Shown here: positions 4,195-35,909 of the stretch, piece after piece | Layout: every line of letters starts with the position of its first letter | Numbering within the stretch: the first letter of the stretch is position 1 | NCBI RefSeq assembly: GCF_006345805.1 | Contig: NW_021836840.1 | Coordinates: 1 to 37,112 of the forward strand | Reading direction: 5' to 3' | Source: Octopus sinensis | Lineage: Eukaryota | Length of the DNA: 37,112 nt | Position numbers and translations under genes: made by a program | Notes under the pieces: model-generated | Told to the model about the DNA's origin: nothing | Seen by the model: only the letters and a program-made list of their open reading frames with translations | The model's database searches: none

Positions 4195-4201
4195 TATATA
4201 T

Positions 4202-4573
4202 ACCGGGCGCCACTGCGTAGTACCAAGGACTCCAAATTTGCCATCAAGATGTAGGACAAGATGCTTGAGTGCCCTGGGCTTCCGAGGCCCACAGCCTTCA
4301 ATATCCTCCCGAAGAACCTGAGGGACCTGCATGGTGTAGATGCGGATGTCTTTAAAGTAGGACTGGATCTCTTCCTGTCAGGTCCCGGATGAACCAACTT
4401 CACGGCAGGAGGTGCAGATGAGGGCAGCTGCATCGAACTCTCTCATGCACCAAATGGCAGTTGCTAAAAAGCATCCGTGAGGTAAAATCATGTAGCAAAC
4501 CAAATGGCGGTGCCCCAGCATGGCCACAGCTCATGAGCTGAAACTGGAAAAATCAAAATCAAATCAAAATCAA
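4202..4573 (+). mobile_element. CR1/L2-like LINE, 5'-truncated 3' end (ORF2 C-terminus, 3'UTR and (AAATC)n tail)
   Basis: With small frameshifts reads RGPQ-FNILPKNLRDLHGVDADVFKVGLDLFLSG-PDEPTSRQEVQMRAAASNSLMHQM; 3' stem-loop at 4527-4540 followed by a tandem tail. Confidence 0.8.
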
Positions 4574-4869: not shown

Positions 4870-5135
4870 TTTGCAGTATTTTGGTATCTTATGTTCTGTA
4901 TTCATCAAGTTACAAGAAAAGCAGCTAAGCATTTTAAGTGGGGACATAGTGTTGCACCGTTTGAAGCCACCTTTATGCCGGTTCTTTAATCCCAAAACTG
5001 ATACCATCTCTTGTCCTTCGAGACAAAGAACGCTTTAACAGAAGCTTCCATGTCGTCTTGGTTGATGAAGTGTCGCGAGCGCAGGAAGTGAACCATGGAC
5101 CGGAAAAAAGTAATAATCCAAGGGAAGGATTTTTG
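4870..5135 (-). pseudogene. mariner transposase C-terminal remnant and 3' end
   Basis: With frameshifts: PLDYYFFRSMVHFLRSRHFINQDDMEASVKAFFVSKDKRWYQFGIKE..RWLQTVQH, matching the mariner region after the third catalytic Asp. Confidence 0.75.
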
Positions 5136-5139
5136 CAGT

Positions 5140-5660
5140 CCTTACGTGCATAAGGAATGGTTTATAAAGGGCCAGCATGCAGAACCTCTCACCAATCATG
5201 GGCGTTTCGAACACAAATTGAAGCTCTGCGTCAGGTGGAATTATGAGGGTATAACTCACTATGAGCTCATTTGGATGGTCAACCCATCGATGCCAACTTC
5301 AGTTCCAAACAGCTGAAGTGGAGGTAGGCATTGGGCGGCAAAAATAACACAAGGTGGGTTCTCCTGCTGCAAGACAACGCAAGACCTCATGCCGCTGGAA
5401 CTACCCGGAATAAGCTACACCCGGAATAAACATATAAACAGGACCTAGCTCCTTCGGATTATTACTTTTCCAATTCATGGCTCACTTTCTGCGTTCTTGA
5501 CGCTCCATCAACCGAGAGAAAGACAAGAGCAGCCCTTAACATGGAATCGAAGAACTAGCAGAAAGGTGACTGCAACATAATGGCCACTCCTTTGAAAGCT
5601 AGGCTGCTTTAGATCTAACTTGACGAATAAAACAAATAAGCTGCCATTCAATAACGGTAT
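5140..5660 (+). pseudogene. mariner transposase remnant (central and C-terminal parts, internally deleted)
   Basis: KLKLCVRWNYEGITHYEL...VLLLQDNARPHAAGTTRNKL, then DLAPSDYYF...HGIEELAER; typical DD34D mariner motifs. Confidence 0.8.
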
Positions 5661-5674
5661 ATTCGTAGAGTTTT

Positions 5675-8600
5675 CAACCAAATTAATGGACCACGGGCTA
5701 TACGTCCCCTGCCAAATTCAAGATCACAACATACACGTACACTGCAACATAATTTCTTTTCCTCAACAGGCCCTGCCCTATTTAACATTGTCCCGAGGGA
5801 GATCAAAGAGGAAAAGGATCCCATCAACTTCAAACAGAGTCTGGATAGATTCCTTCAAAGAATACCAGATAAGCCACCCATAATTGGATACAACTCACCC
5901 AACAAGAACTCACTACTTGAACAAAACTGGATACATCTCACCCAACAAGAACTCACTACTTGAACAAAACTGGATACATCTCACCCAACAAGAACTCACT
6001 ACTTGAACAAAACTGGATACAACTCACCCAACAAGAACTCACTACTTGAACAAAACTGGATACATCTCACCCAACAAGAACTCACTACTTGAACAAAACT
6101 GGATACAACTCACCCAACAAGAACTCACTACTTGAACAAAACTGGATACATCTCACCCAACAAGAACTCACTACTTGAACAAAACTGGATACATCTCACC
6201 CAACAAGAACTCACTACTTGAACAAAACTGGATACAACTCACCCAACAAGAACTCACTACTTGAACAAAACTGGATACATCTCACCCAACAAGAACTCAC
6301 TACTTGAACAAAACTGGATACATCTCACCCAACAAGAACTCACTAGTTGAACAAAACTGGATACATCTCACCCAACAAGAACTCACTACTTGAACAAAAC
6401 TGGATACATCTCACCCAACAAGACTCACTACTCGAACAAAACTGGATACAACTCACCCAACAAGAACTCACTACTTGAACAAAACTGGATACATCTCACC
6501 CAACAAGACTCACTACTTGAACAAAACTGGATACACTCACCCACCAACAAGAACTCACTACTTGAACAAACTGGATACAACTCACCCAACAAGAACTCAC
6601 TACTTGAACAAAACTGGATACATCTCACCAAGAAGAACTCACTACTTGAACAAAACTGGATACATCTCACCCAACAAGAACTCACTACTTGAACAAAACT
6701 GGATACATCTCACCCAACAAGAACTCACTACTTGAACAAAACTGTAACAACTCACCCAACAAGAACTCACTACTTGAACAAAACTGGATACATCTCACCC
6801 AACAAGAACTCACTACTTGAACAAAACTGGATACATCTCACCCAACAAGAACTCACTAGTTGAACAAAACTGGATACATCTCACCCAACAAGAACTCACT
6901 ACTTGAACAAAACTGGATACATCTCACCCAACAAGAACTCACTACTCGAACAAAACTGGATACAACTCACCCAACAAGAACTCACTACTTGAACAAAACT
7001 GGATACATCTCACCCAACAAGAACTCACTACTTGAACAAAACTGGATACATCTCACCCAACAAGAACTCACTACTTGAACAAAACTGGATACAACTCACC
7101 CAACAAGAACTCACTACTTGAACAGAACTGGATACATCTCACCCAACAAGAACTCACTACTTGAACAAAACTGGATACAACTCACCCAACAAGAACTCAC
7201 TACTTGAACAAAACTGGATACAACTCACCCAACAAGAACTCACTACTTGAACAAAACTGGATACATCTCACCCAACAAGAACTCACTACTTGAACAAAAC
7301 TGGATACATCTCACCCAACAAGAACTCACTACTTGAACAAAACTGGATACAACTCACCCAACAAGAACTCACTACTTGAACAAAACTGGATACAACTCAC
7401 CCAACAAGAACTCACTACTTGAACAAAACTGGATACAACTCACCCAACAAGAACTCACTACTTGAACAAAACTGGATACATCTCACCCAACAAGAACTCA
7501 CTACTTGAACAAAACTGGATACATCTCACCCAACAAGAACTCACTACTTGAACAAAACTGGATACAACTCACCCAACAAGAACTCACTACTTGAACAAAA
7601 CTGGATACAACTCACCCAACAAGAACTCACTACTTGAACAAAACTGGATACAACTCACCCAACAAGACTCACTACTTGAACAAAACGGATACATCTCACC
7701 CAACAAGAACTCACTACTTGAACAAAACTGGATACATCTCACCCAACAAGAACTCACTACTTGAACAAAACTGTACAACTCACCCAACAAGAACTCACTA
7801 CTTGAACAAAACTGGATACAACTCACCCAACAAGAACTCACTACTTGCAAAAACTGGATACATCTCACCCAACAAGAACTCACTACTTGAACAAAACTGG
7901 ATACAACTCACCCACCCAACAAGAACACTACTTGAACAAAACTGGATACATCTCACCCAACAAGAACTCACTACTTGAACAAAACTGGATACATCTCACC
8001 CAACAAGAACTCACTACTTGAACAAAACTGGATACAACTCACCCAACAAGAACTCACTACTTGAACAAAACTGGATACATCTCACCCAACAAGAACTCAC
8101 TACTTGAACAAAACTGGATACAACTCACCCAACAAGAACTCACTACTTGAACAAAACTGGATACATCTCACTCTCACCCAACAAGAACTCACTACTTGAA
8201 CAAAACTGGATACATCTCACCCACCAAGAACTCACTACTTGAACAAAACTGGATACATCTCACCCACAAGAACTCACTACTTGAACAAAACTGGATACAT
8301 CTCACCCAACAAGAACTCACTACTTGAACAAAACTGGATACATCTCACCCAACAAGAACTCACTACTTGAACAAATGGATACATCTCACCCAACAAGAAC
8401 TCACTACTTGAACAAAACTGGATACAACTCACCCAACAAGAACTCACTACTTGAACAAAACTGGATACATCTCACCCAACAAGAACTCACTACTTGAACA
8501 AAACTGGATACAACTCACCCCAACAAAACTCACTACTTGAACAAAACTGGATACAACTCACCCACACAAGAACTCACTACTTGAACAAAACTGGATACAT

Positions 8601-9055
8601 CTCACCCACAACAGAACTCACTACTTGAACAAAACTGGATACACTCACCCAACAAGAACTCACTACTGACCACAACAAACTGGATACAACTCACCCCAAC
8701 AACTAACCAAAACTACTCACTACTTGAACAAAACTGGATACACTCACCCAACAAGAACTCACTACTTGAACAAAACTGGATACAACTCACCCAACACAAA
8801 CACTCACTACTTGAACAAAACTGGATACATCTCACCCACACAAGAACTCACTCTACTTGAACAAACTGGATACAACTCACCCCACAAACTCACTACTTGA
8901 ACAAAACTGGATACAACTCACCCAACAAGAACTCACTACTTGAACAAAACTTGACTTAAACAGGATTCGAATAATCCTATCAGGTGGTGCTATTAAGTTA
9001 GACATGGCCTGGACCAATCTCTGGTCGAAACATATCTAAGTTTTATCTAAGTTTA
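5675..9055 (+). mobile_element. CR1/L2-like LINE 3' fragment interrupted by its own tandemly amplified segment
   Basis: 5675-5925 reads NGPRAIRPLPNSRSQHTRTLQHNFFSSTGPALFNIVPREIKEEKDPINFKQSLDRFLQRIPDKPPIIGYNSPNKNSLLE; 3'UTR with ggtggtgc..catggcc, hairpin gacca/tggtc, gaaac and an atctaagttt tail at 8952-9055. Confidence 0.8.
5886..8951 (+). repeat. 43-bp tandem minisatellite, about 71 copies
   Basis: Unit GGATACA(A/T)CTCACCCAACAAGAACTCACTACTTGAACAAAACT; highly homogeneous, more indels after about 8150. Confidence 0.98.
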
Positions 9056-10559: not shown

Positions 10560-11200
10560 CCTTTCACCTTGTGTGCCGTAAGACCCTCCTTAGCAATATT
10601 TGGGTGGTCCAAGCAGAGTGGAATGAAACGTTGTCATGCATGAATACGATATTCCTTAGAAGAGACCGTGGCATGTCATTTAGCCAATGTTCCAAGATAT
10701 CCTTCAGAAGATTGCAGTAGGCGGCTGTGGTCACTATAACTTCTTCAGGTACCCTGACTGGGCCAACAAGTCTGTACCCAATGATACCAGACCACAACAT
10801 GACACCTCTACTCAGTTGTTGCCGTCGTGAACATTGGTGACGCTCATCTCCAAAATAGATCCAAACTATTTTCCCAACTGTCAGGTCCGTCGAGGGTCGC
10901 TCTGGTTTTGCTAGTGAACAGAACACAACTCATGTCTATCGTCATTTAATTTTTGGCCCATTGATGCCTCGAAACCCTGTGAGTAGGAAGTTTCAGGGGT
11001 TCTTCCACGGAAGCCATGGTCCCAAAGATGCGGTTTATGGTGGTTTTCGATACACGAGGAAGTCGGGAGGCCATGAAATTGTCATTCTTTGTTTTCGCAG
11101 ATTCCCTACGTAAGTTGTGACCAATATTCCTTAAATCCCTAGCTGTCACAGTTTTGGAAGTCCTACAATCGGATCGTTTCTTTTTTGGCGCTCATGTGGC
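10560..11200 (-). pseudogene. Tc1-family transposase remnant
   Basis: TARDLRNI..LRR...VSKTTINRI...R.QWAK; RRQQ..GVMLWSGIIGYRLVGPVRVPE...IVFMHDN..H; frameshifts and stops. Confidence 0.85.
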
Positions 11201-17599: not shown

Positions 17600-18945
17600 T
17601 GCGTGTGTGTGTGTGTGTATGTTTCTACGTGTGTGTGTGTGTACGTTTCTACGTGTGTGTGTGTATGTGTATGTTTCTACGTGTGTGCGTGTGTGTGTAT
17701 GTTTCTACGTGTGTGTGTGTGTGTATGTTTCTACGTGTGTGTGTGTGTGTATGTTTCTACGTGTGTGTGTGTGGTGTATGTTTCTACGTGTGGTGGTGTT
17801 TTTTACGTGGTGTGTGTGGTGTTTCTACGTGTGTGTGTGTATGTTTCTAGTTGTGGTGTGTGTGTATGTTTCTACGTGTGTGTGTGTGTATGTTTCTACG
17901 TGTGTGTGTGTGTATGTTTCTACGTGTGTGTGTGTGTGTATGTTTCTACGTGTGTGTGTGTGTGTGTGTATGTTTCTACGTGTGTGTATGTGTATGTTTC
18001 TACGTGTGTGTGTGTGTGTGTATGTTTCTACGTGTGTGTGTGTGTATGTTTCTACGTGTTGGTGGGTGTGTATGTTTCTACGTGTGTGTGTGGTGTATGT
18101 TTCTACGTGTGTGTATGTGTATGTTTTTACGTGGTGTGTGTGTGTGTATGTGTCTACGTGTGGTGTGTGTGTGTATGTTTCTACGTGTGTGTATGTGTAT
18201 GTTTCTACGTGTGTGTGTGTGTGTAGTTTTTCTACGTGTGTTTGTGGTGTGTATGTTTCTACGTGTGTGTGTGGTGTATGTTTCTACGTGTGTGTATGTG
18301 TATGTTTCTACGTGTGTGTGTGTGTGTATGTTTCTACGTTGTGTGTGGTGTGTAGTTTCTACGTGTGGTATGTGTATGTTTCTACGTGTGTGTGTGTGTG
18401 TATGTTTCTACGTGTGTGTGTGTGTATGTTTCTACGTGTGTGTGTGTGTGTATGTTTCTACGTGTGTGTGTTTGTATGTTTCTACGTGTGTGTGTGTGTG
18501 TATGTTTCTACGTGTGTGCGTGTGTGTGTTTCTACGTGTGTGTGTGTGTATTTTTCTACGTGTGTGTGTGTGTGTGTATGTTTCTACGTGTGTGTGTGTG
18601 TATTTTCTACGTGTGTGTGTGTGTGTGTGTATGTTTCTACGTGTGTGTGTGTGTATATGTTTCTACGTGTGTGTGTGTGCATGTTTCTACGTGTGTGTGT
18701 GTGTGTATGTTTCTACGTGTGTGTATGTGTATGTTTCTACGTGTGTGTGTGTGTTTGTATGTTTCCACGCGCGCGTGTGTGTGTGTATGTTTCTACGTGT
18801 GTGTGTGTGTGTATGTTTCTACGTGTGTGTGTGTGTGTATGTTTCTACGTGTGTGTATGTGTATGTTTCTACGTGTGTGTGTGTGTTTGTATGTTTCCAC
18901 GCGCGTGTGTGTGTGTGTATGTTTCTACGCGTGTGTGTGTGTGTC
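17600..18945. repeat. Composite minisatellite: constant ATGTTTCTAC anchor plus variable (GT)n, roughly 55 units
   Basis: Direct reading; unit about 20-30 bp. Confidence 0.95.
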
Positions 18946-19309
18946 TGTCTACTACCGTTTTGAGTTTCTATGCGCTTGTGTATGTATGTATATGTGTCGA
19001 TTTGTATGGTTGTGTGTGTGTGATTGCGATTGTTTTGTTCTTCTTAGAGTGATGGTGATGATGGTGTTGGAGGTGATGGAGGTGGTCAGGGACGGTAGGG
19101 GAGTGTTGTCGGATCTGACATATTTAGTAACAGCAGCAGCAGCAGCAGCAACGGTAGTAGTAGTAGTAGTATAGTAGTAGTAGTACTAGTAGTGGAAGAG
19201 AATTAATAAACGATGAGAGTGCTAAAGATTTTGGTGCTGTAACTTGTGGTGGTAATGTCGTTGGTGATATTGGTGGTGGTGCTGGTGGTGGTGGTGTGAC
19301 GATGGTGTT

Positions 19310-24582: not shown

Positions 24583-26053
24583 CCCGGCAATGGGCCGAGA
24601 GGAAACTGTCCCTAAAAGGTCGGGCGGAGGTGGCGAACACGTACATCGCGTCCGTCATCTACTACCACCTGACCGTCGTACCTTGTCCCGACCCTACCAT
24701 CACCAAACTACAACGCATTCTCTTTCGCTTCTTGTGGAAAGGATGCGTCCCGATGGTCAGGCGATCCATTTGCTGTCAACACCCGTTAAAAGGAGGGCTG
24801 GGCATGCCGTGGTTGATGATGCGCAGACACGCGCTGAGACTGCGACATCTCTGGCTCTATGTAGACGACGGTGAACAGGTGTGGTCGCCGTTGTGTGAGG
24901 CACGCTTTCCCGCAGCTCGTCTCCATGACCGAACTGCAGTCGTGGATCAAAAAGAGGCCGAGGAAGGGTGAATGGCACCGCGAGTGTCGCGTTGCTCTCA
25001 AGCAACTCTGCCGTCCTGGGTCGACCTTGAGTGACTTCAACACAACCAAAGCATTTATAGGGGTTTAGTGGAGGGGAGGTACGACGACGAGCTCGGGGCG
25101 AACCTGGATGTCGACGAGGAGTACCTGACCCGCCTGTTCAGGACGACTTTCGGGCCAGGGTCCATGGACAACTTCCAGAGATCCCTGGCCTGGCAGTGCT
25201 ACCGAGAAGCGCTACCCGTTCGGGATAAGCTCTACAGATACGGCTCGAGAAACACGGGGCCGACCTGCCCGAGATGCGGTCAGAGCGACGAAACCGTTCT
25301 GCACGCACTCGTGCTGTGTCCAACAATTTCCGACCTGTGGGCTTATGTCGAACAACTGCTGTCACGTGTGGGACGAGTCGGTTTATCAGCTGAGTCTATC
25401 GTCAATATTGTCACGCCTCCTGCCTTCAAACGGGAAGGAAGAGCTATTTTCATCATCCTTGTGGCTATGGCGAAAGAATGTATCTGGTGGACGCGTCTGA
25501 AAGGATTGGAGACAAACACTTTCCTCTCTGGTCAATCTCTCATCAACTTCTTCAAGTACCACTTGAAAAGGAAAGTGAGAGTAGAGAGGCAAGTTTTCTA
25601 GCGAATGTTTTAAAAAAAGATGGTGAATGTAGCAAGAATGGCACGTATGAATGACGAAGCCACCTTGAGCATGATCCTATGAACCCAGAAATTGAAAACA
25701 GAGAGTTGCTTATTCGCAAAAAAAAAAAAAAAAAAAATATAATGACTCCATTGACCGAGGTTACGTGGTCTTTTCTGTAGGCTTTTCTTTCCACGGGTAA
25801 ACCTCACCTGTCCTCCCCTTTACACTTCATATTGACATTTCTGTGATAACGATCCTTTGATCAATTTTTTTTTTTCCTCTCCCCCTTTTTTTTAACCCCC
25901 CTTTTTTTGTCCTCTTTCTCTCCTTTTACGATCCCTTTTGATCGAAACTCCTCCTTCCTTTTTTTTTCTTTTTTTTTTAAACCTTCAAAAGAAAAGCTCT
26001 ACCTTGTAATTTGTTCTATCTGTGTGCAGCCATGTGTGGCTAATAAAGAAACA
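24583..26053 (+). mobile_element. L1-clade (Tx1-like) LINE, 5'-truncated: ORF2 C-terminal region and 3'UTR
   Basis: WAERKLSLKGRAEVANTYIAS..LFRFLWKG..RRSICCQHPLKGGLGMP; zf-RVT-type CPRCGQSDETVLHALVLC; frameshifts near 24895, 25060 and 25600; likely native stop at 25680-25682; ends ggctaataaagaaaca. Confidence 0.9.
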
Positions 26054-29657: not shown

Positions 29658-30075
29658 TATTTCTTTACTACCCACAAGGGGCTACACACAGATGAGACAA
29701 AGAAGGATAGACAAACGGATTAAGTCGATTATAGCGACCTCAATGCGTAACTACTACTTATTTAATCGATCCCGAAAGGATGAAAGTCAAAGTCGACCAC
29801 GGCGGAATTTGAACTCAGAACGTAACGGCAGACGAAATACCTATTTCTTTACTACCCACAAGGGGCTAAACACGGAGGAGACAAACAAGGACAGACAAAC
29901 GGATTAAGTCGATTATATCGACCCCAGTGCGTAACTGGTACTTAATTTATCGACCCCGAAAGAATGGAAGGCAAAGTGGACCTCGGCAGAATTTGAACTC
30001 AGAACGTAACGGCAGACGAAATAATATCGCTAAGCATTTCGGCCGACGTGCTAACGTTTCTGCCATCCCGCCGCC
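29658..30075 (-). mobile_element. SINE family D (possibly OK-like) dimer, 184-bp period, with TSD
   Basis: Head ggcggcgggatggcagaaacgttagc, B-box gttcaaattc, two body+tail units; gaagagagattct duplicated at 29645-29657 and 30078-30090. Confidence 0.9.
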
Positions 30076-31589: not shown

Positions 31590-32845
31590 CAGAGCTGACT
31601 GCAACAAATATCACATTTCTCAGTAACAGATATCAAACCTCTTAGTGACAAAAATCACAGTTCTCACAACCAAATAACAAAGACTCATTAATAAATTTCA
31701 CACCCTTCAGTAAAAGATGTCACAGTTCTCAGTATAAGATATCACAGCACTAACAGGTATCATAGCTCCTACTAAAGATATTGCAGCTCTCACTAATAGA
31801 TATCATAGCTCTCAAGAACTGATATCAAAGCTCTCACTAACAAATATCACAGCTCTCACTAAATGATATCCAAGTGCCTACTAACAAATAACAAAAACTC
31901 TCTAATAAATTTCACACCTCTCTGTAAAAGATATCACAGCTCTCCCTAACAGATATCATAACTCTCACTAACAGATATCATAGCTCTCAAGATCTGATAT
32001 CAAAGCTCTCACTAACACATATCACATCTCTCACTAACAGCTATGCAAGTTATCACTATCAGATAACAAAGACTCACTAATAAATGCCACGCCTCACCCG
32101 TAAAAGATATCACACCTCTAACTATAAGATATCACAGCTCTTCCTAACAGATATCATAGCTCCCAGTAACAGATATCACAGCTCTCACTAACAGATATCA
32201 CAGCTCTCACTAACAGATATCGTAGCTTTCACTAATTGATATCACAGCTCACACTAACATATATCCAAGTTCCTACTAACAAAAAACAAAAACTTAGTAT
32301 TAATTTTCACACCCCTCTGTCAAAGATATCACAGCTCACACTAGCAGATACCCAAGTTCTCACTAAGAAATAACAAAAACTCACTAATAAATTTCACACA
32401 CCCCTGTAAAAGAAATCACAGCTCTCCCTAACAGATATCACAGCTCTCCCTAACAGATATCACAGCTCTCACTAACGGATATCACATCTCTCACTAACAG
32501 ATATGCAAGGTCTCACTACCAAATAACAAATACTCACTAATAAGTGTCACGCCTCACCTGTAAAAGATATCACAACTCTCACTATAAGACATCACAGCTT
32601 TCCTTAACAGATATCATAGCTCCCAGTAACAGATATCACATCTCTCACTAACAGACATCATAGCTCTCACTAACGGATATCACACCTCTCCCTAGCAGAT
32701 AACATAGCTTTCACTAACAAATATCACAACTCTCGCTGTAAGTTATCACAACTCAGGAAACGATAGCACAGCTCTCACTAAGAGATATCACAGGTCTCAG
32801 TAACACATATCTCAGCTCTCAGTAATGAATATATCACAACTCTAC
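31590..32845. repeat. Degenerate 22-bp minisatellite with higher-order modules, about 57 units
   Basis: Consensus AGATATCACAGCTCTCACTAAC; recurrent variant block aaataacaaa.actcactaataaatttcacacc..tgtaaa. Confidence 0.9.
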
Positions 32846-34292: not shown

Positions 34293-35065
34293 TATTCTTT
34301 TCTACTCTAGGCACAAGGGCCGAAATTTTGGGAGTGTGGGACCAGTCGATGAGATCGACCCCAGTATGCAACTGGTACTTAATTCATCGATCCTGAAAGG
34401 ATGAAAGGCAAAGTCGACCTCGGCGGAATTTGAACCCAGAACGTAGCGGCAAAAGGAATATCTATTTCTTTACTACCCACAAGGGGCTAAACACAGAGGA
34501 GACAAACAAAGACAGACAGACGGATTAAGTCGATTATATCGATCCCAATGCGTAACTGGTACTTAATTCATCGACCCCGAAAGGATGAAAGGAAAAGTCG
34601 GCCTCGGCGGAATTTGAACTCAGAACGTAGCGGCAGACGGAATATCTATTTCTTTACTACCCACAAGGGGCTAAACACAGGGAGGACAAACAAGGACAGA
34701 CAGACGGATTAAGTCGATCATATCGACCCCAGTGCGTAACTGGTGCTTAATTTATCGACCCTGAAAGGATGAAAGGAAAAGTCGACCTCGGCGGAATTTG
34801 AACTCAGAACGTAGCGGCAAACGGAATATCTATTTCTTTACTACCCAAAAGGGGCTAAACACAGAGGAGACAAACAAGGACAGGCAGACGGATTAAGTCG
34901 ATTATATCGATCCCAATGCGTAACTGGTACTTAATTTATCGACCCTGAAAGGATGAAAGGAAAAGTCGGCCTCGGCGGAACTTGAACTTAGAACGTAGCG
35001 GCAAATGCAATATCGCTAAGCATTTCGTCCGGCCTGCTAAAGTTTCTGCCAGATCGATCGCCACC
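34293..35065 (-). mobile_element. SINE family D tetramer: one head, three 184-bp units with tail 1, terminal unit with tail 2
   Basis: tatttctttactaccc at 34463, 34647 and 34831 (period 184); head at about 35010-35065; last unit ends cccttgtgcctagagtagaaaagaata. Confidence 0.9.
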
Positions 35066-35497: not shown

Positions 35498-35909
35498 GGC
35501 GGCGTGCTGGCAGAAACGTTAGCACGCAGGGCGAAATACGTAGTCGTATTTCGTCTGCCGTTACGTTCTGGGTTCAAATTCCGCCGAGGTCGACCTTGCC
35601 TTTCATCCTTTCGGGGTCGATAAATTAAGTACCAGTTACACACTGGGGTCGATATAATCGATTTAATCTTTCTGTCTGTCCTTGTTTGTCTCCTCTGTGT
35701 TTAGCTCCTTGTGGGTAGTAAAGAAATAGATATTGCGTTTGCCGCTACGTTCTGAGTTCAAATTCCGCCGAGGACTTTGCCTTTCATCCTTTCGGGATCG
35801 ATAAATTAAGGACCAGTTACGCACTGGGGTCGATGTAATCGATTTAATCTGTCTGTCTGTCCTTGTTTGTCCCCTCTGTATTTAGTCCCTTGTGGGTAGT
35901 AAAGAAATA
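35498..35909 (+). mobile_element. SINE family D dimer with an 18-bp TSD
   Basis: aaatataggcaggattaa at 35480-35497 and 35905-35922; two units, period about 181. Confidence 0.9.

What the first reader, a model, noticed from the sequence alone, without database searches (positions are those of the whole stretch)
5675..9055. A 3-kb satellite born from the last codons of a LINE ORF2, still nested inside the LINE
Seen: the LINE frame ...FLQRIPDKPPII runs directly into the first unit (GGA TAC AAC TCA CCC AAC AAG AAC TCA CTA CTT GAA = GYNSPNKNSLLE, corresponding to the C-terminal PDEP....NSL motif also seen at 4380-4445). After about 71 copies of the 43-mer the LINE 3'UTR and tail resume at 8952. 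Two unit variants (ggatacaac and ggatacatc) are interspersed, and homogeneity is high. This is a direct view of satellite birth from retrotransposon coding sequence, either by RT slippage during insertion or by later unequal exchange.
Basis: seen in the sequence. Interest (0 to 1): 0.7.

Follow-up and report, generated by a model that had tools for sequence, protein, structure and literature searches.

The report
LINE-tail codons amplified into a minisatellite
A 43-base piece covering the last 14 codons of a jumping gene (LINE) has been copied head to tail 71 times inside a short, dead fragment of that element; this is a clean but ordinary example of a mobile element seeding a tandem repeat.

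Summary
A 43-bp tandem array of 71.0 copies lies at 5885-8951. Of the 71 units, 45 are perfect, and two variants (CAAC and CATC) are interspersed. Upstream, 5673-5885 encodes the C-terminus of an endonuclease/reverse-transcriptase LINE ORF2 (430 homologues, best E 3e-27). That frame runs straight into unit 1, which encodes the family's conserved GY..N.NSLLE motif. Downstream come the ORF2 stop (TAA 8957-8959), a conserved hairpin-bearing 3'UTR and an (ATCTAAGT)2 tail.

Four related LINE copies (five contigs) from other datasets, one from an octopus metatranscriptome, are collinear with both flanks. Each carries the unit-homologous segment once. The monomer therefore derives from the ORF2 3' end.

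- The host "LINE" is only a ~370-bp 5'-truncated remnant beside a mariner-like element.
- "Satellite" is unproven. Only one 3-kb locus is seen, so minisatellite is the safer word.

Two unit variants, plus a block of rare variants duplicated 12 units away, argue for stepwise DNA-level expansion rather than a single RT-slippage event. I could not tell whether the expansion happened here or in a parent element.

LINE-derived satellites are already known, for example the chicken CR1-derived HinfI satellite. This is a new member of a known kind, of modest interest.

The parts
4882..5646 (+). Degenerate mariner-like DNA transposon immediately upstream. It is context and marks the left limit of the LINE remnant.
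   Evidence: Inverted terminal matches, 5571-5646 against 4956-4882, at 71% identity. The frame at about 5360-5400 reads VLLLQDNARPH, a mariner-type catalytic motif (my reading).
5673..5885 (+). C-terminal coding remnant of LINE ORF2, 5'-truncated (about 70 codons before the array).
   Evidence: tblastn of full-length ORF2 relatives hits only 5673-5927, matching their residues ~890-1000. phmmer gives 430 hits at E<=1e-3, best 3.4e-27. The relatives carry Exo_endo_phos and RVT_1 domains.
5886..5928 (+). Unit 1 of the array. In frame with ORF2 it encodes GYNSPNKNSLLEQN, the conserved GY..N.NSLLE(W) end of the family.
   Evidence: Translation. In the protein alignment Y79 and N83 are invariant, and N85, S86 and W90 are nearly invariant. 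The window has Q at position 90.
5885..8951 (+). 43-bp tandem array of 71 units (unit GGATACA[A/T]CTCACCCAACAAGAACTCACTACTTGAACAAAACT). The array boundary is ambiguous by 1 nt (a shared T).
   Evidence: TRF, unit parse, pattern count against shuffles. No frame stays open for more than 42 codons in a perfect array.
6230..7000 (+). Duplicated multi-unit block inside the array. Units 11 and 13 and units 23 and 25 carry the same two rare substitutions (C>G at unit position 31, T>C at position 33), 12 units apart.
   Evidence: Both markers recur with this +2 spacing in only 6 of 20000 shuffles.
8951..8959 (+). Last ORF2 codons and stop as they would read with a single unit: TTG ACT TAA (...NSLLEQNLT*).
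   Evidence: One-unit reconstruction. The L002 relative ends ...LLEWALTPQNLT*.
8960..9033 (+). LINE 3'UTR with conserved hairpins, at about 8983-9009 and 9012-9026.
   Evidence: 79-81% nucleotide identity to the 3' ends of L001, L003 and L005. RNA fold -30.4 kcal/mol, z = -3.5. Consensus fold has 14 pairs, 2 with compensatory changes.
9034..9052 (+). LINE tail: ATCTAAGT, TTT, ATCTAAGT (a short tandem-repeat tail, not poly(A)).
   Evidence: Read. L001 ends with ATCTAAGT three times at the homologous place.

Best explanation
**What it is.** This is a TE-derived minisatellite. A heavily 5'-truncated copy of an endonuclease/RT LINE landed next to an old mariner-like element. That copy holds the last ~80 ORF2 codons, the stop, a ~75-nt hairpin-bearing 3'UTR and an (ATCTAAGT)n tail. 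The architecture looks CR1/L2-like.

**What was amplified.** A 43-bp segment running from the GY codons of the conserved C-terminal motif to 6 nt before the stop codon was duplicated in tandem. The breakpoints share only 1 nt (T). It was then expanded to 71 copies.

**How it grew (inferred).** I infer that the expansion was stepwise and at the DNA level, by replication slippage and/or unequal sister-chromatid exchange that moved single units and multi-unit blocks. A point mutation created a second unit variant, A versus T at unit position 8, and further exchange interspersed the two variants.

**Coding status.** The array itself is non-coding. Because 43 is not a multiple of 3, the ORF2 frame shifts in unit 2 and stops 25 codons after unit 1 begins. 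Every frame on both strands has a stop at least every 43 codons.

**Shown:** the array, its origin from ORF2 3' codons, the collinear LINE flanks, a single copy in relatives, and the block duplication.
**Inferred:** the DNA-level mechanism, and that the expansion took place at this locus.
For: - Array statistics.
- The ORF2 frame runs into unit 1.
- Homologues align through query residue 89 of 91, that is, through unit 1.
- GY..N.NSLLEW is conserved in 10 relatives.
- Relatives of ~1000 aa carry APE and RT domains.
- Related DNA copies L001, L002, L003/L004 and L005 each contain one copy of the unit-homologous segment. L001, L003/L004 and L005 then carry the same 3'UTR, and L001 the same tail.
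- L005 matches window 5779-5911 and 8947-9055 with 25 nt between the two matches. The window has 3035 nt there.
- With one unit the ORF reads ...NSLLEQNLT*, like L002's ...QNLT*.
- The first and last units are perfect and there are exactly 71.0 copies, as expected for tandem duplication of one defined segment.
- Rare paired substitutions recur 12 units apart, in 6 of 20000 shuffles, so multi-unit DNA exchange occurred.
Against: - No other copy of this LINE subfamily and no reads from the source genome were available. I cannot show that the immediate parent element had a single unit.
- The nearest relatives are only 67% identical in protein and 75-81% in DNA.
- Relative to L002 and L003 the window's unit lacks about 15 nt (TGG...CCA) between CTTGAA and CAAAACT, so the progenitor sequence is only partly known.
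- No convincing target-site duplication was found; the only candidate is the 7-mer CAATAAC at 5649 and 9073.
- Indel bases outnumber substitutions 61 to 12 and cluster at the right end. This looks like long-read consensus noise, so the copy number and some variants may be imprecise.
Confidence: 0.6

Rival explanations
1. The array was not born here. A parent LINE already carried a 43-bp VNTR between ORF2 and its 3' recognition hairpin, and this is simply a 5'-truncated retrotransposed copy of it. That would be an SVA-like 'VNTR inside a mobile element' situation, able to seed the same minisatellite at many loci.
For: - With the array present, ORF2 would still be complete apart from a changed tail (...LLEQN-WIHLTQQELTT* instead of ...LLEQN-LT*).
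- The 3'UTR hairpins and tail, which such LINEs need for priming, are intact downstream.
- So an array-bearing element could in principle remain mobile.
- Nothing in the window dates the expansion relative to the insertion.
Against: - All four related copies recovered have one unit.
- No protein resembling the array's translation exists in a 5.8-billion-protein collection, and neither the 43-mer nor the unit junction is in JGI metagenome contigs. These are weak negatives because the source genome is not in those collections.
Confidence: 0.25
2. The array was made in one step by reverse-transcriptase template jumping (RT slippage) during target-primed reverse transcription of a normal single-unit RNA.
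For: - The array is close to the 3' end, where reverse transcription starts.
- The breakpoints show only 1-nt microhomology, which template switching tolerates.
Against: - A single RNA template with one unit would give identical units. The array instead has two variants in irregular order (29 A, 39 T) and a duplicated block marked by two rare substitutions.
- Those features require mutation between rounds of duplication.
- Seventy consecutive precise 43-nt back-jumps are also implausible (inference).
Confidence: 0.04
3. The array, or most of its length, is an assembly or consensus artefact of noisy long reads over a much shorter repeat.
For: Indel bases outnumber substitutions 61 to 12 and concentrate in 8463-8868, which is typical of unpolished long-read consensus in repeats.
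Against: - Both junctions are clean and in register.
- 45 units are perfect.
- The variant pattern is structured, with a block duplication and a TTAAA TTAAA TTAA run of variants across units 33-46, rather than random.
- Assemblers more often collapse than inflate such arrays (general knowledge).
Confidence: 0.08
4. An unrelated satellite that happens to sit in, or was inserted into, a LINE remnant. The resemblance of its monomer to ORF2 codons would then be coincidental.
For: None beyond the general abundance of tandem repeats in this window (97 TRF rows).
Against: - Unit 1 continues the ORF2 frame.
- It encodes the family's conserved motif at the homologous position.
- It aligns at the DNA level with the single-copy segment of the relatives.
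- The last unit joins the homologous stop and 3'UTR in register.
Confidence: 0.01

Closest known systems
Chicken HinfI (SCR1) satellite derived from the CR1 LINE (3'UTR plus part of ORF2), as listed in the review PMC9659126
   Same: The tandem-repeat monomer comes from the 3' end of an APE/RT LINE and includes ORF2 coding sequence.
   Different: - The monomer here is only 43 bp (14 codons) and excludes the 3'UTR.
- The array is still flanked in register by the rest of the element.
- Only one 3-kb locus is known, so satellite status is unproven.
L1-derived satellites of mammals: PROsat (Phodopus, ORF2), Pvc20 (harbour seal, ORF2), common cetacean satellite (L1 3' end) (PMC9659126)
   Same: A LINE ORF2 or 3'-end segment is turned into a tandem repeat.
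   Different: - Those are abundant, multi-locus satellites whose link to the TE is inferred from similarity.
- Here the progenitor context is intact, but abundance is unknown.
- The LINE clade differs: this one has a hairpin plus an 8-nt-repeat tail, not poly(A).
SVA elements (VNTR carried inside a non-LTR retrotransposon) (PMC3287187, listed; comparison from my own knowledge)
   Same: A minisatellite lies internal to a retroelement, upstream of the 3' module needed for mobilisation.
   Different: - SVA is a non-autonomous composite whose VNTR is present in every copy.
- Here relatives lack the array, and there is no evidence that an array-bearing element is mobile.
CR1/L2-type 'stringent' LINE 3' ends (3'UTR stem-loop plus short tandem-repeat tail, for example the CR1 octamer repeat and UnaL2), from my own knowledge and not checked in a paper here
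   Same: A conserved terminal hairpin is followed by an 8-nt repeat tail, (ATCTAAGT)n.
   Different: - Clade membership by RT phylogeny was not tested.
- The tail microsatellite is a separate feature from the 43-bp array.

Membership tests
APE-type LINE (non-LTR retrotransposon), 3' end | Homology to an ORF2 that carries an apurinic-type endonuclease and a reverse transcriptase | tested here: met
   Window 5673-5927 matches the C-terminal ~80 residues of ~1000-aa proteins that have Exo_endo_phos and RVT_1 domains. The window copy itself lacks those domains because it is 5'-truncated.
APE-type LINE (non-LTR retrotransposon), 3' end | Family-specific conserved 3'UTR and tail directly after the ORF2 stop | tested here: met
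   8947-9055 is 79-81% identical to the 3' ends of L001, L003 and L005. The hairpins are kept, with 2 compensatory pairs in 4 sequences. The ATCTAAGT repeat tail is present in the window and in L001.
APE-type LINE (non-LTR retrotransposon), 3' end | Target-site duplication flanking the insertion | tested here: inconclusive
   The only shared word of 7 nt or more near the ends is CAATAAC (5649 and 9073), and it lies 20 nt beyond the tail. It could be chance.
CR1/L2 clade of LINEs | Placement of the RT domain within the clade by phylogeny | not tested
   No reference clade sequences were at hand. The label rests only on the 3'-end architecture (hairpin plus 8-nt repeat tail) and on my own knowledge.
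TE-derived tandem repeat (minisatellite or satellite) | Head-to-tail array of many near-identical units | tested here: met
   71.0 copies of 43 bp at 94% match. 45 units are perfect.
TE-derived tandem repeat (minisatellite or satellite) | Monomer homologous to a defined segment of a transposable element that is single-copy in the element | tested here: met
   The unit aligns with the single GY..NSLLE-coding segment of L001, L002, L003 and L005 and of 10 proteins.
TE-derived tandem repeat (minisatellite or satellite) | Array flanked in register by the neighbouring parts of the same element | tested here: met
   The ORF2 frame enters unit 1. The last unit reads into the stop and the 3'UTR. Both flanks match one relative with a 25-nt gap between them.
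Satellite DNA in the strict sense | Long arrays at several loci and appreciable genomic abundance | not testable with these tools
   The source genome is not in the reachable collections. There is no hit for the 43-mer, the junction or the array peptides. No second array exists in the 37-kb window.
VNTR-bearing mobile retroelement (SVA-like) | Independent insertions, each carrying the internal array | not testable with these tools
   This needs the source genome. The four relatives recovered carry one unit.

The most novel reading that the evidence does not exclude
The array may belong to a still-mobile LINE subfamily that carries a 43-bp VNTR between an essentially intact ORF2 and its 3' recognition hairpin. 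Retrotransposition, with the usual 5' truncation, would then scatter ready-made minisatellite seeds across an octopus-like genome. That would be a retrotransposition-driven route to satellite dissemination in an autonomous LINE.
Probability: 0.15. Interest if true: 0.5.

Novelty: new member of a known kind. Interest (0 to 1): 0.3.

Why it matters
It is a tidy, base-resolved example of how a mobile element's coding sequence can seed a tandem repeat. Both junctions, the progenitor reading frame and the single-copy state in relatives are all visible. That makes it useful as a teaching case or an annotation example.

It also matters for repeat annotation of cephalopod-like genomes, where such arrays could be mis-called as independent satellites or break LINE models.

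It does not change what is known. LINE-derived satellites, including ones derived from ORF2 and 3'UTR segments, are documented in birds and mammals (PMC9659126).

Tried and rejected
- **Word-indexed protein search with the 93-aa C-terminus:** no candidate. The exhaustive phmmer search was needed instead.
- **Exact 43-mer and 20-nt unit junction in JGI metagenome contigs:** 0 hits each.
- **Protein search with a 114-aa ORF from inside the array,** to find the array elsewhere: nothing at E<=0.01.
- **Exact look-up of 10 window ORFs to identify the source genome:** none is in the collection.
- **Rfam at gathering thresholds and ARAGORN on the window:** nothing.
- **Pfam on the C-terminal peptide:** only a sub-threshold chance hit, FXMR_C2 at 15.9 bits against a cut-off of 28. 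Pfam has no model for this LINE C-terminal region.
- **Look-up of P0031's contig:** not on record.
- **Longest repeated block of A/T variants as a test for higher-order structure:** not significant on its own (3716 of 20000 shuffles). Only the recurrence of the rare markers is informative.
- **Using relatives to decide which variant (A or T) is ancestral:** they are split. L001 and L002 have T, while L003 and L005 have A.
- **Mariner inserted into a longer LINE:** rejected. No ORF2 homology exists anywhere else in the window, including upstream of 4882.
- **Literature search for an octopus 43-bp satellite:** nothing relevant.
- **Run accessions:** only SRR3401912 could be tied to an organism, an octopus metatranscriptome.

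Full report
**1. The observation**

The sequence at 5885-8951 is a head-to-tail array of a 43-bp unit, GGATACA[A/T]CTCACCCAACAAGAACTCACTACTTGAACAAAACT. TRF gives period 43, 71.0 copies, 94% matches and score 5354, by far the strongest array in the window. A 34-nt core of the unit occurs 55 times with up to 3 mismatches, against 0 in shuffled sequence, and only inside this interval.

Parsing unit by unit gives 71 units, 45 of which are perfect copies of one of two variants:
- 29 units have A at unit position 8 (GGATACAAC).
- 39 units have T (GGATACATC).
- 3 units have that base deleted.

Apart from this site there are 12 substitutions and 61 inserted or deleted bases. 32 of the indel bases lie in 8463-8868.

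**2. The flanks are a LINE 3' end, and unit 1 is ORF2 coding sequence**

The frame is open from 5655. It reads ...GPALFNIVPREIKEEKDPINFKQSLDRFLQRIPDKPPII and continues into unit 1 as GYNSPNKNSLLEQN.

An exhaustive phmmer search of this 91-aa translation against 1.84 billion representative proteins found 430 proteins at E<=1e-3 (best 3.4e-27, 67% identity). Most alignments run to query residue 88-89 of 91, that is, through unit 1.

Relatives of ~1000 aa (P0019, P0036, P0062) carry Exo_endo_phos and RVT_1 domains. The family is therefore an APE-type LINE ORF2, and the window matches its last ~80 residues only (tblastn, 5673-5927).

In an alignment with ten relatives the unit-1 residues fall on the family's conserved end, PD.PP.PGY...N.NSLLEW. 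Y79 and N83 are invariant, and N85 and S86 are nearly so.

If only one unit were present, the frame would read ...NSLLEQNLT and stop at TAA 8957-8959. The relative from L002 ends ...LLEWALTPQNLT*.

**3. Relatives have the segment once**

Contigs that encode four relatives could be fetched:
- L001, an ENA 'metagenome' contig.
- L002, from Logan run SRR3401912. A paper describes this run as an octopus metatranscriptome (PMC11662614).
- L003 and L004, two near-identical contigs of one relative.
- L005.

L003, L004 and L005 come from three runs of one accession series.

A MAFFT alignment of these with the window's left flank, one unit and right flank is collinear throughout. The order is ORF2 C-terminus, a single unit-homologous segment, the stop, then the 3'UTR, which is present in L001, L003 and L005. 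The 3'UTR reads CAGGTGGTGCTATTAAGTTAG...GGCC, a hairpin, then GAAACATATCTAAGT.

By BLASTN, L005 matches window 5779-5911 and 8947-9055 with 25 nt between the two matches in L005. The window has 3035 nt there.

The 3' module looks functional in design:
- The window's 105 nt fold at -30.4 kcal/mol, z = -3.5.
- The four-sequence consensus fold keeps two hairpins, with compensatory changes at two pairs.
- The tail is ATCTAAGT repeated twice in the window and three times in L001.

A hairpin followed by an 8-nt repeat tail is the architecture I know from CR1/L2-type LINEs. That comparison rests on my own knowledge, and clade membership was not tested.

The window's unit lacks about 15 nt that L002 and L003 have between CTTGAA and CAAAACT. 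This explains Q in place of the near-invariant W. All 71 units share this state, so it predates the amplification.

**4. What the host element is**

It is not a full LINE. No other ORF2 homology exists in the window. The remnant, about 370 bp without the array, starts within about 25 nt of the right end of a degenerate mariner-like element at 4882-5646. That element's terminal inverted repeats match at 71%.

No convincing target-site duplication was found. The LINE-like end at about 4200-4570, which carries 'PDEP...SNSL', is real but belongs to another family.

**5. How the array grew**

The junctions are ...ATAATT|GGATAC on the left, ...AAAACT|GGATAC between units and ...AAAACT|TGACTT on the right. 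The duplicated segment is thus defined to within one shared T, and the copy number is an integer. This is what a simple tandem duplication followed by amplification predicts.

The array cannot be the product of one RT-slippage event on a single-unit template. It contains two variants in irregular order. It also contains two rare substitutions, C>G at unit position 31 and T>C at position 33, which occur together two units apart in units 11 and 13 and again in units 23 and 25. That arrangement arises in only 6 of 20000 shuffles. So at least one block of six or more units was duplicated after those mutations arose.

This is the signature of unequal exchange or replication slippage at the DNA level. 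The run TTAAA TTAAA TTAA in the variant string (units 33-46) hints at a 5-unit higher-order repeat. The A/T pattern alone is not statistically compelling, however (3716 of 20000 shuffles).

I cannot decide whether these steps happened at this locus or in a parent element before retrotransposition. With the array, ORF2 would keep everything but its last two residues (...LLEQN-WIHLTQQELTT*), and the 3' recognition module is intact. An array-bearing element could therefore in principle move.

The array has no coding potential of its own, with at most 42 codons open in any frame.

**6. Artefact?**

The excess of indels over substitutions and their clustering at the right end look like long-read consensus noise, so the exact copy number is uncertain. 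Even so, the clean in-register junctions, the 45 perfect units and the structured variant pattern argue that a long array is real. Reads are needed to settle this.

**7. Comparison with what is known**

Tandem repeats born from transposable elements are well documented. The review PMC9659126 lists several LINE-derived cases:
- the chicken HinfI/SCR1 satellite, from the CR1 3'UTR plus part of ORF2;
- PROsat and Pvc20, from L1 ORF2;
- the common cetacean satellite, from the L1 3' end.

The present case is the same kind of event, caught with its progenitor context intact, in what is probably a cephalopod genome. That origin is an inference, based on a related copy (59% protein identity) in an octopus dataset and on the microsatellite-rich sequence.

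I found no report of this 43-mer. I could not test whether it is abundant or present at more than one locus, so 'minisatellite' is the defensible term.

**8. Verdict**

This is a new member of a known kind, and interest is about 0.3.

Noticed in passing
window 4882-5646: Degenerate mariner-like DNA transposon. Its inverted terminal matches are 71% identical, and a VLLLQDNARPH motif lies near 5360-5400. It ends within about 25 nt of the start of the LINE remnant.
   Followed up: partly
window about 4200-4570: 3' end of a different LINE family. It reads ...AFNILPKNLRDL...FK..LD.FL, then after a frameshift QVPDEPTSRQEVQMRAAASNSLMHQ. ORF2 proteins of the array's family do not hit it.
   Followed up: partly
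window 29658-30023, 34344-35014, 35547-35909: A 181-184-bp element (containing ...GGCGGAATTTGAACTCAGAACGTAGCGGC...) occurs three times. Each occurrence is itself 2-3.6 tandem copies, and the third is in opposite orientation. This may be another interspersed repeat forming short tandem arrays. ARAGORN and Rfam report nothing there.
   Followed up: partly
window 17602-18948: A 1.35-kb array of a 24-26-bp unit (CGTGTGTGTGTGTGTGTATGTTTCTA), about 53 copies, 84% matches and 11% indels.
   Followed up: no
window 31603-32838: A 1.2-kb old, diverged array of a 22-bp unit (AACAGATATCACAGCTCTCACT), with 44-, 66- and 87-bp higher-order periods at about 66% identity. Its origin is unknown.
   Followed up: no
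window 25068-25601 (+): A 177-aa ORF matches Pfam zf-RVT (E 1.7e-07, 32.2 bits against a cut-off of 27.5). It is a fragment of yet another reverse-transcriptase element.
   Followed up: no
window 10564-10926 (-): A 120-aa ORF contains ...FMHDNVSFHSAWTT..., which resembles the DDE region of a Tc1/mariner transposase. It has no significant Pfam hit.
   Followed up: no
L001 (ENA ERZ23499376 scaffold_248608, 1-588): A contig labelled as metagenomic carries a clean animal-type LINE 3' end: ORF2 C-terminus, hairpin 3'UTR and ATCTAAGT three times. That metagenome assembly therefore contains eukaryotic DNA.
   Followed up: no
whole window: The window is extremely dense in simple repeats (97 TRF rows in 37 kb: many TA, TATC/TCTG and ATT/TAT tracts). 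There is no recognisable host gene.
   Followed up: no
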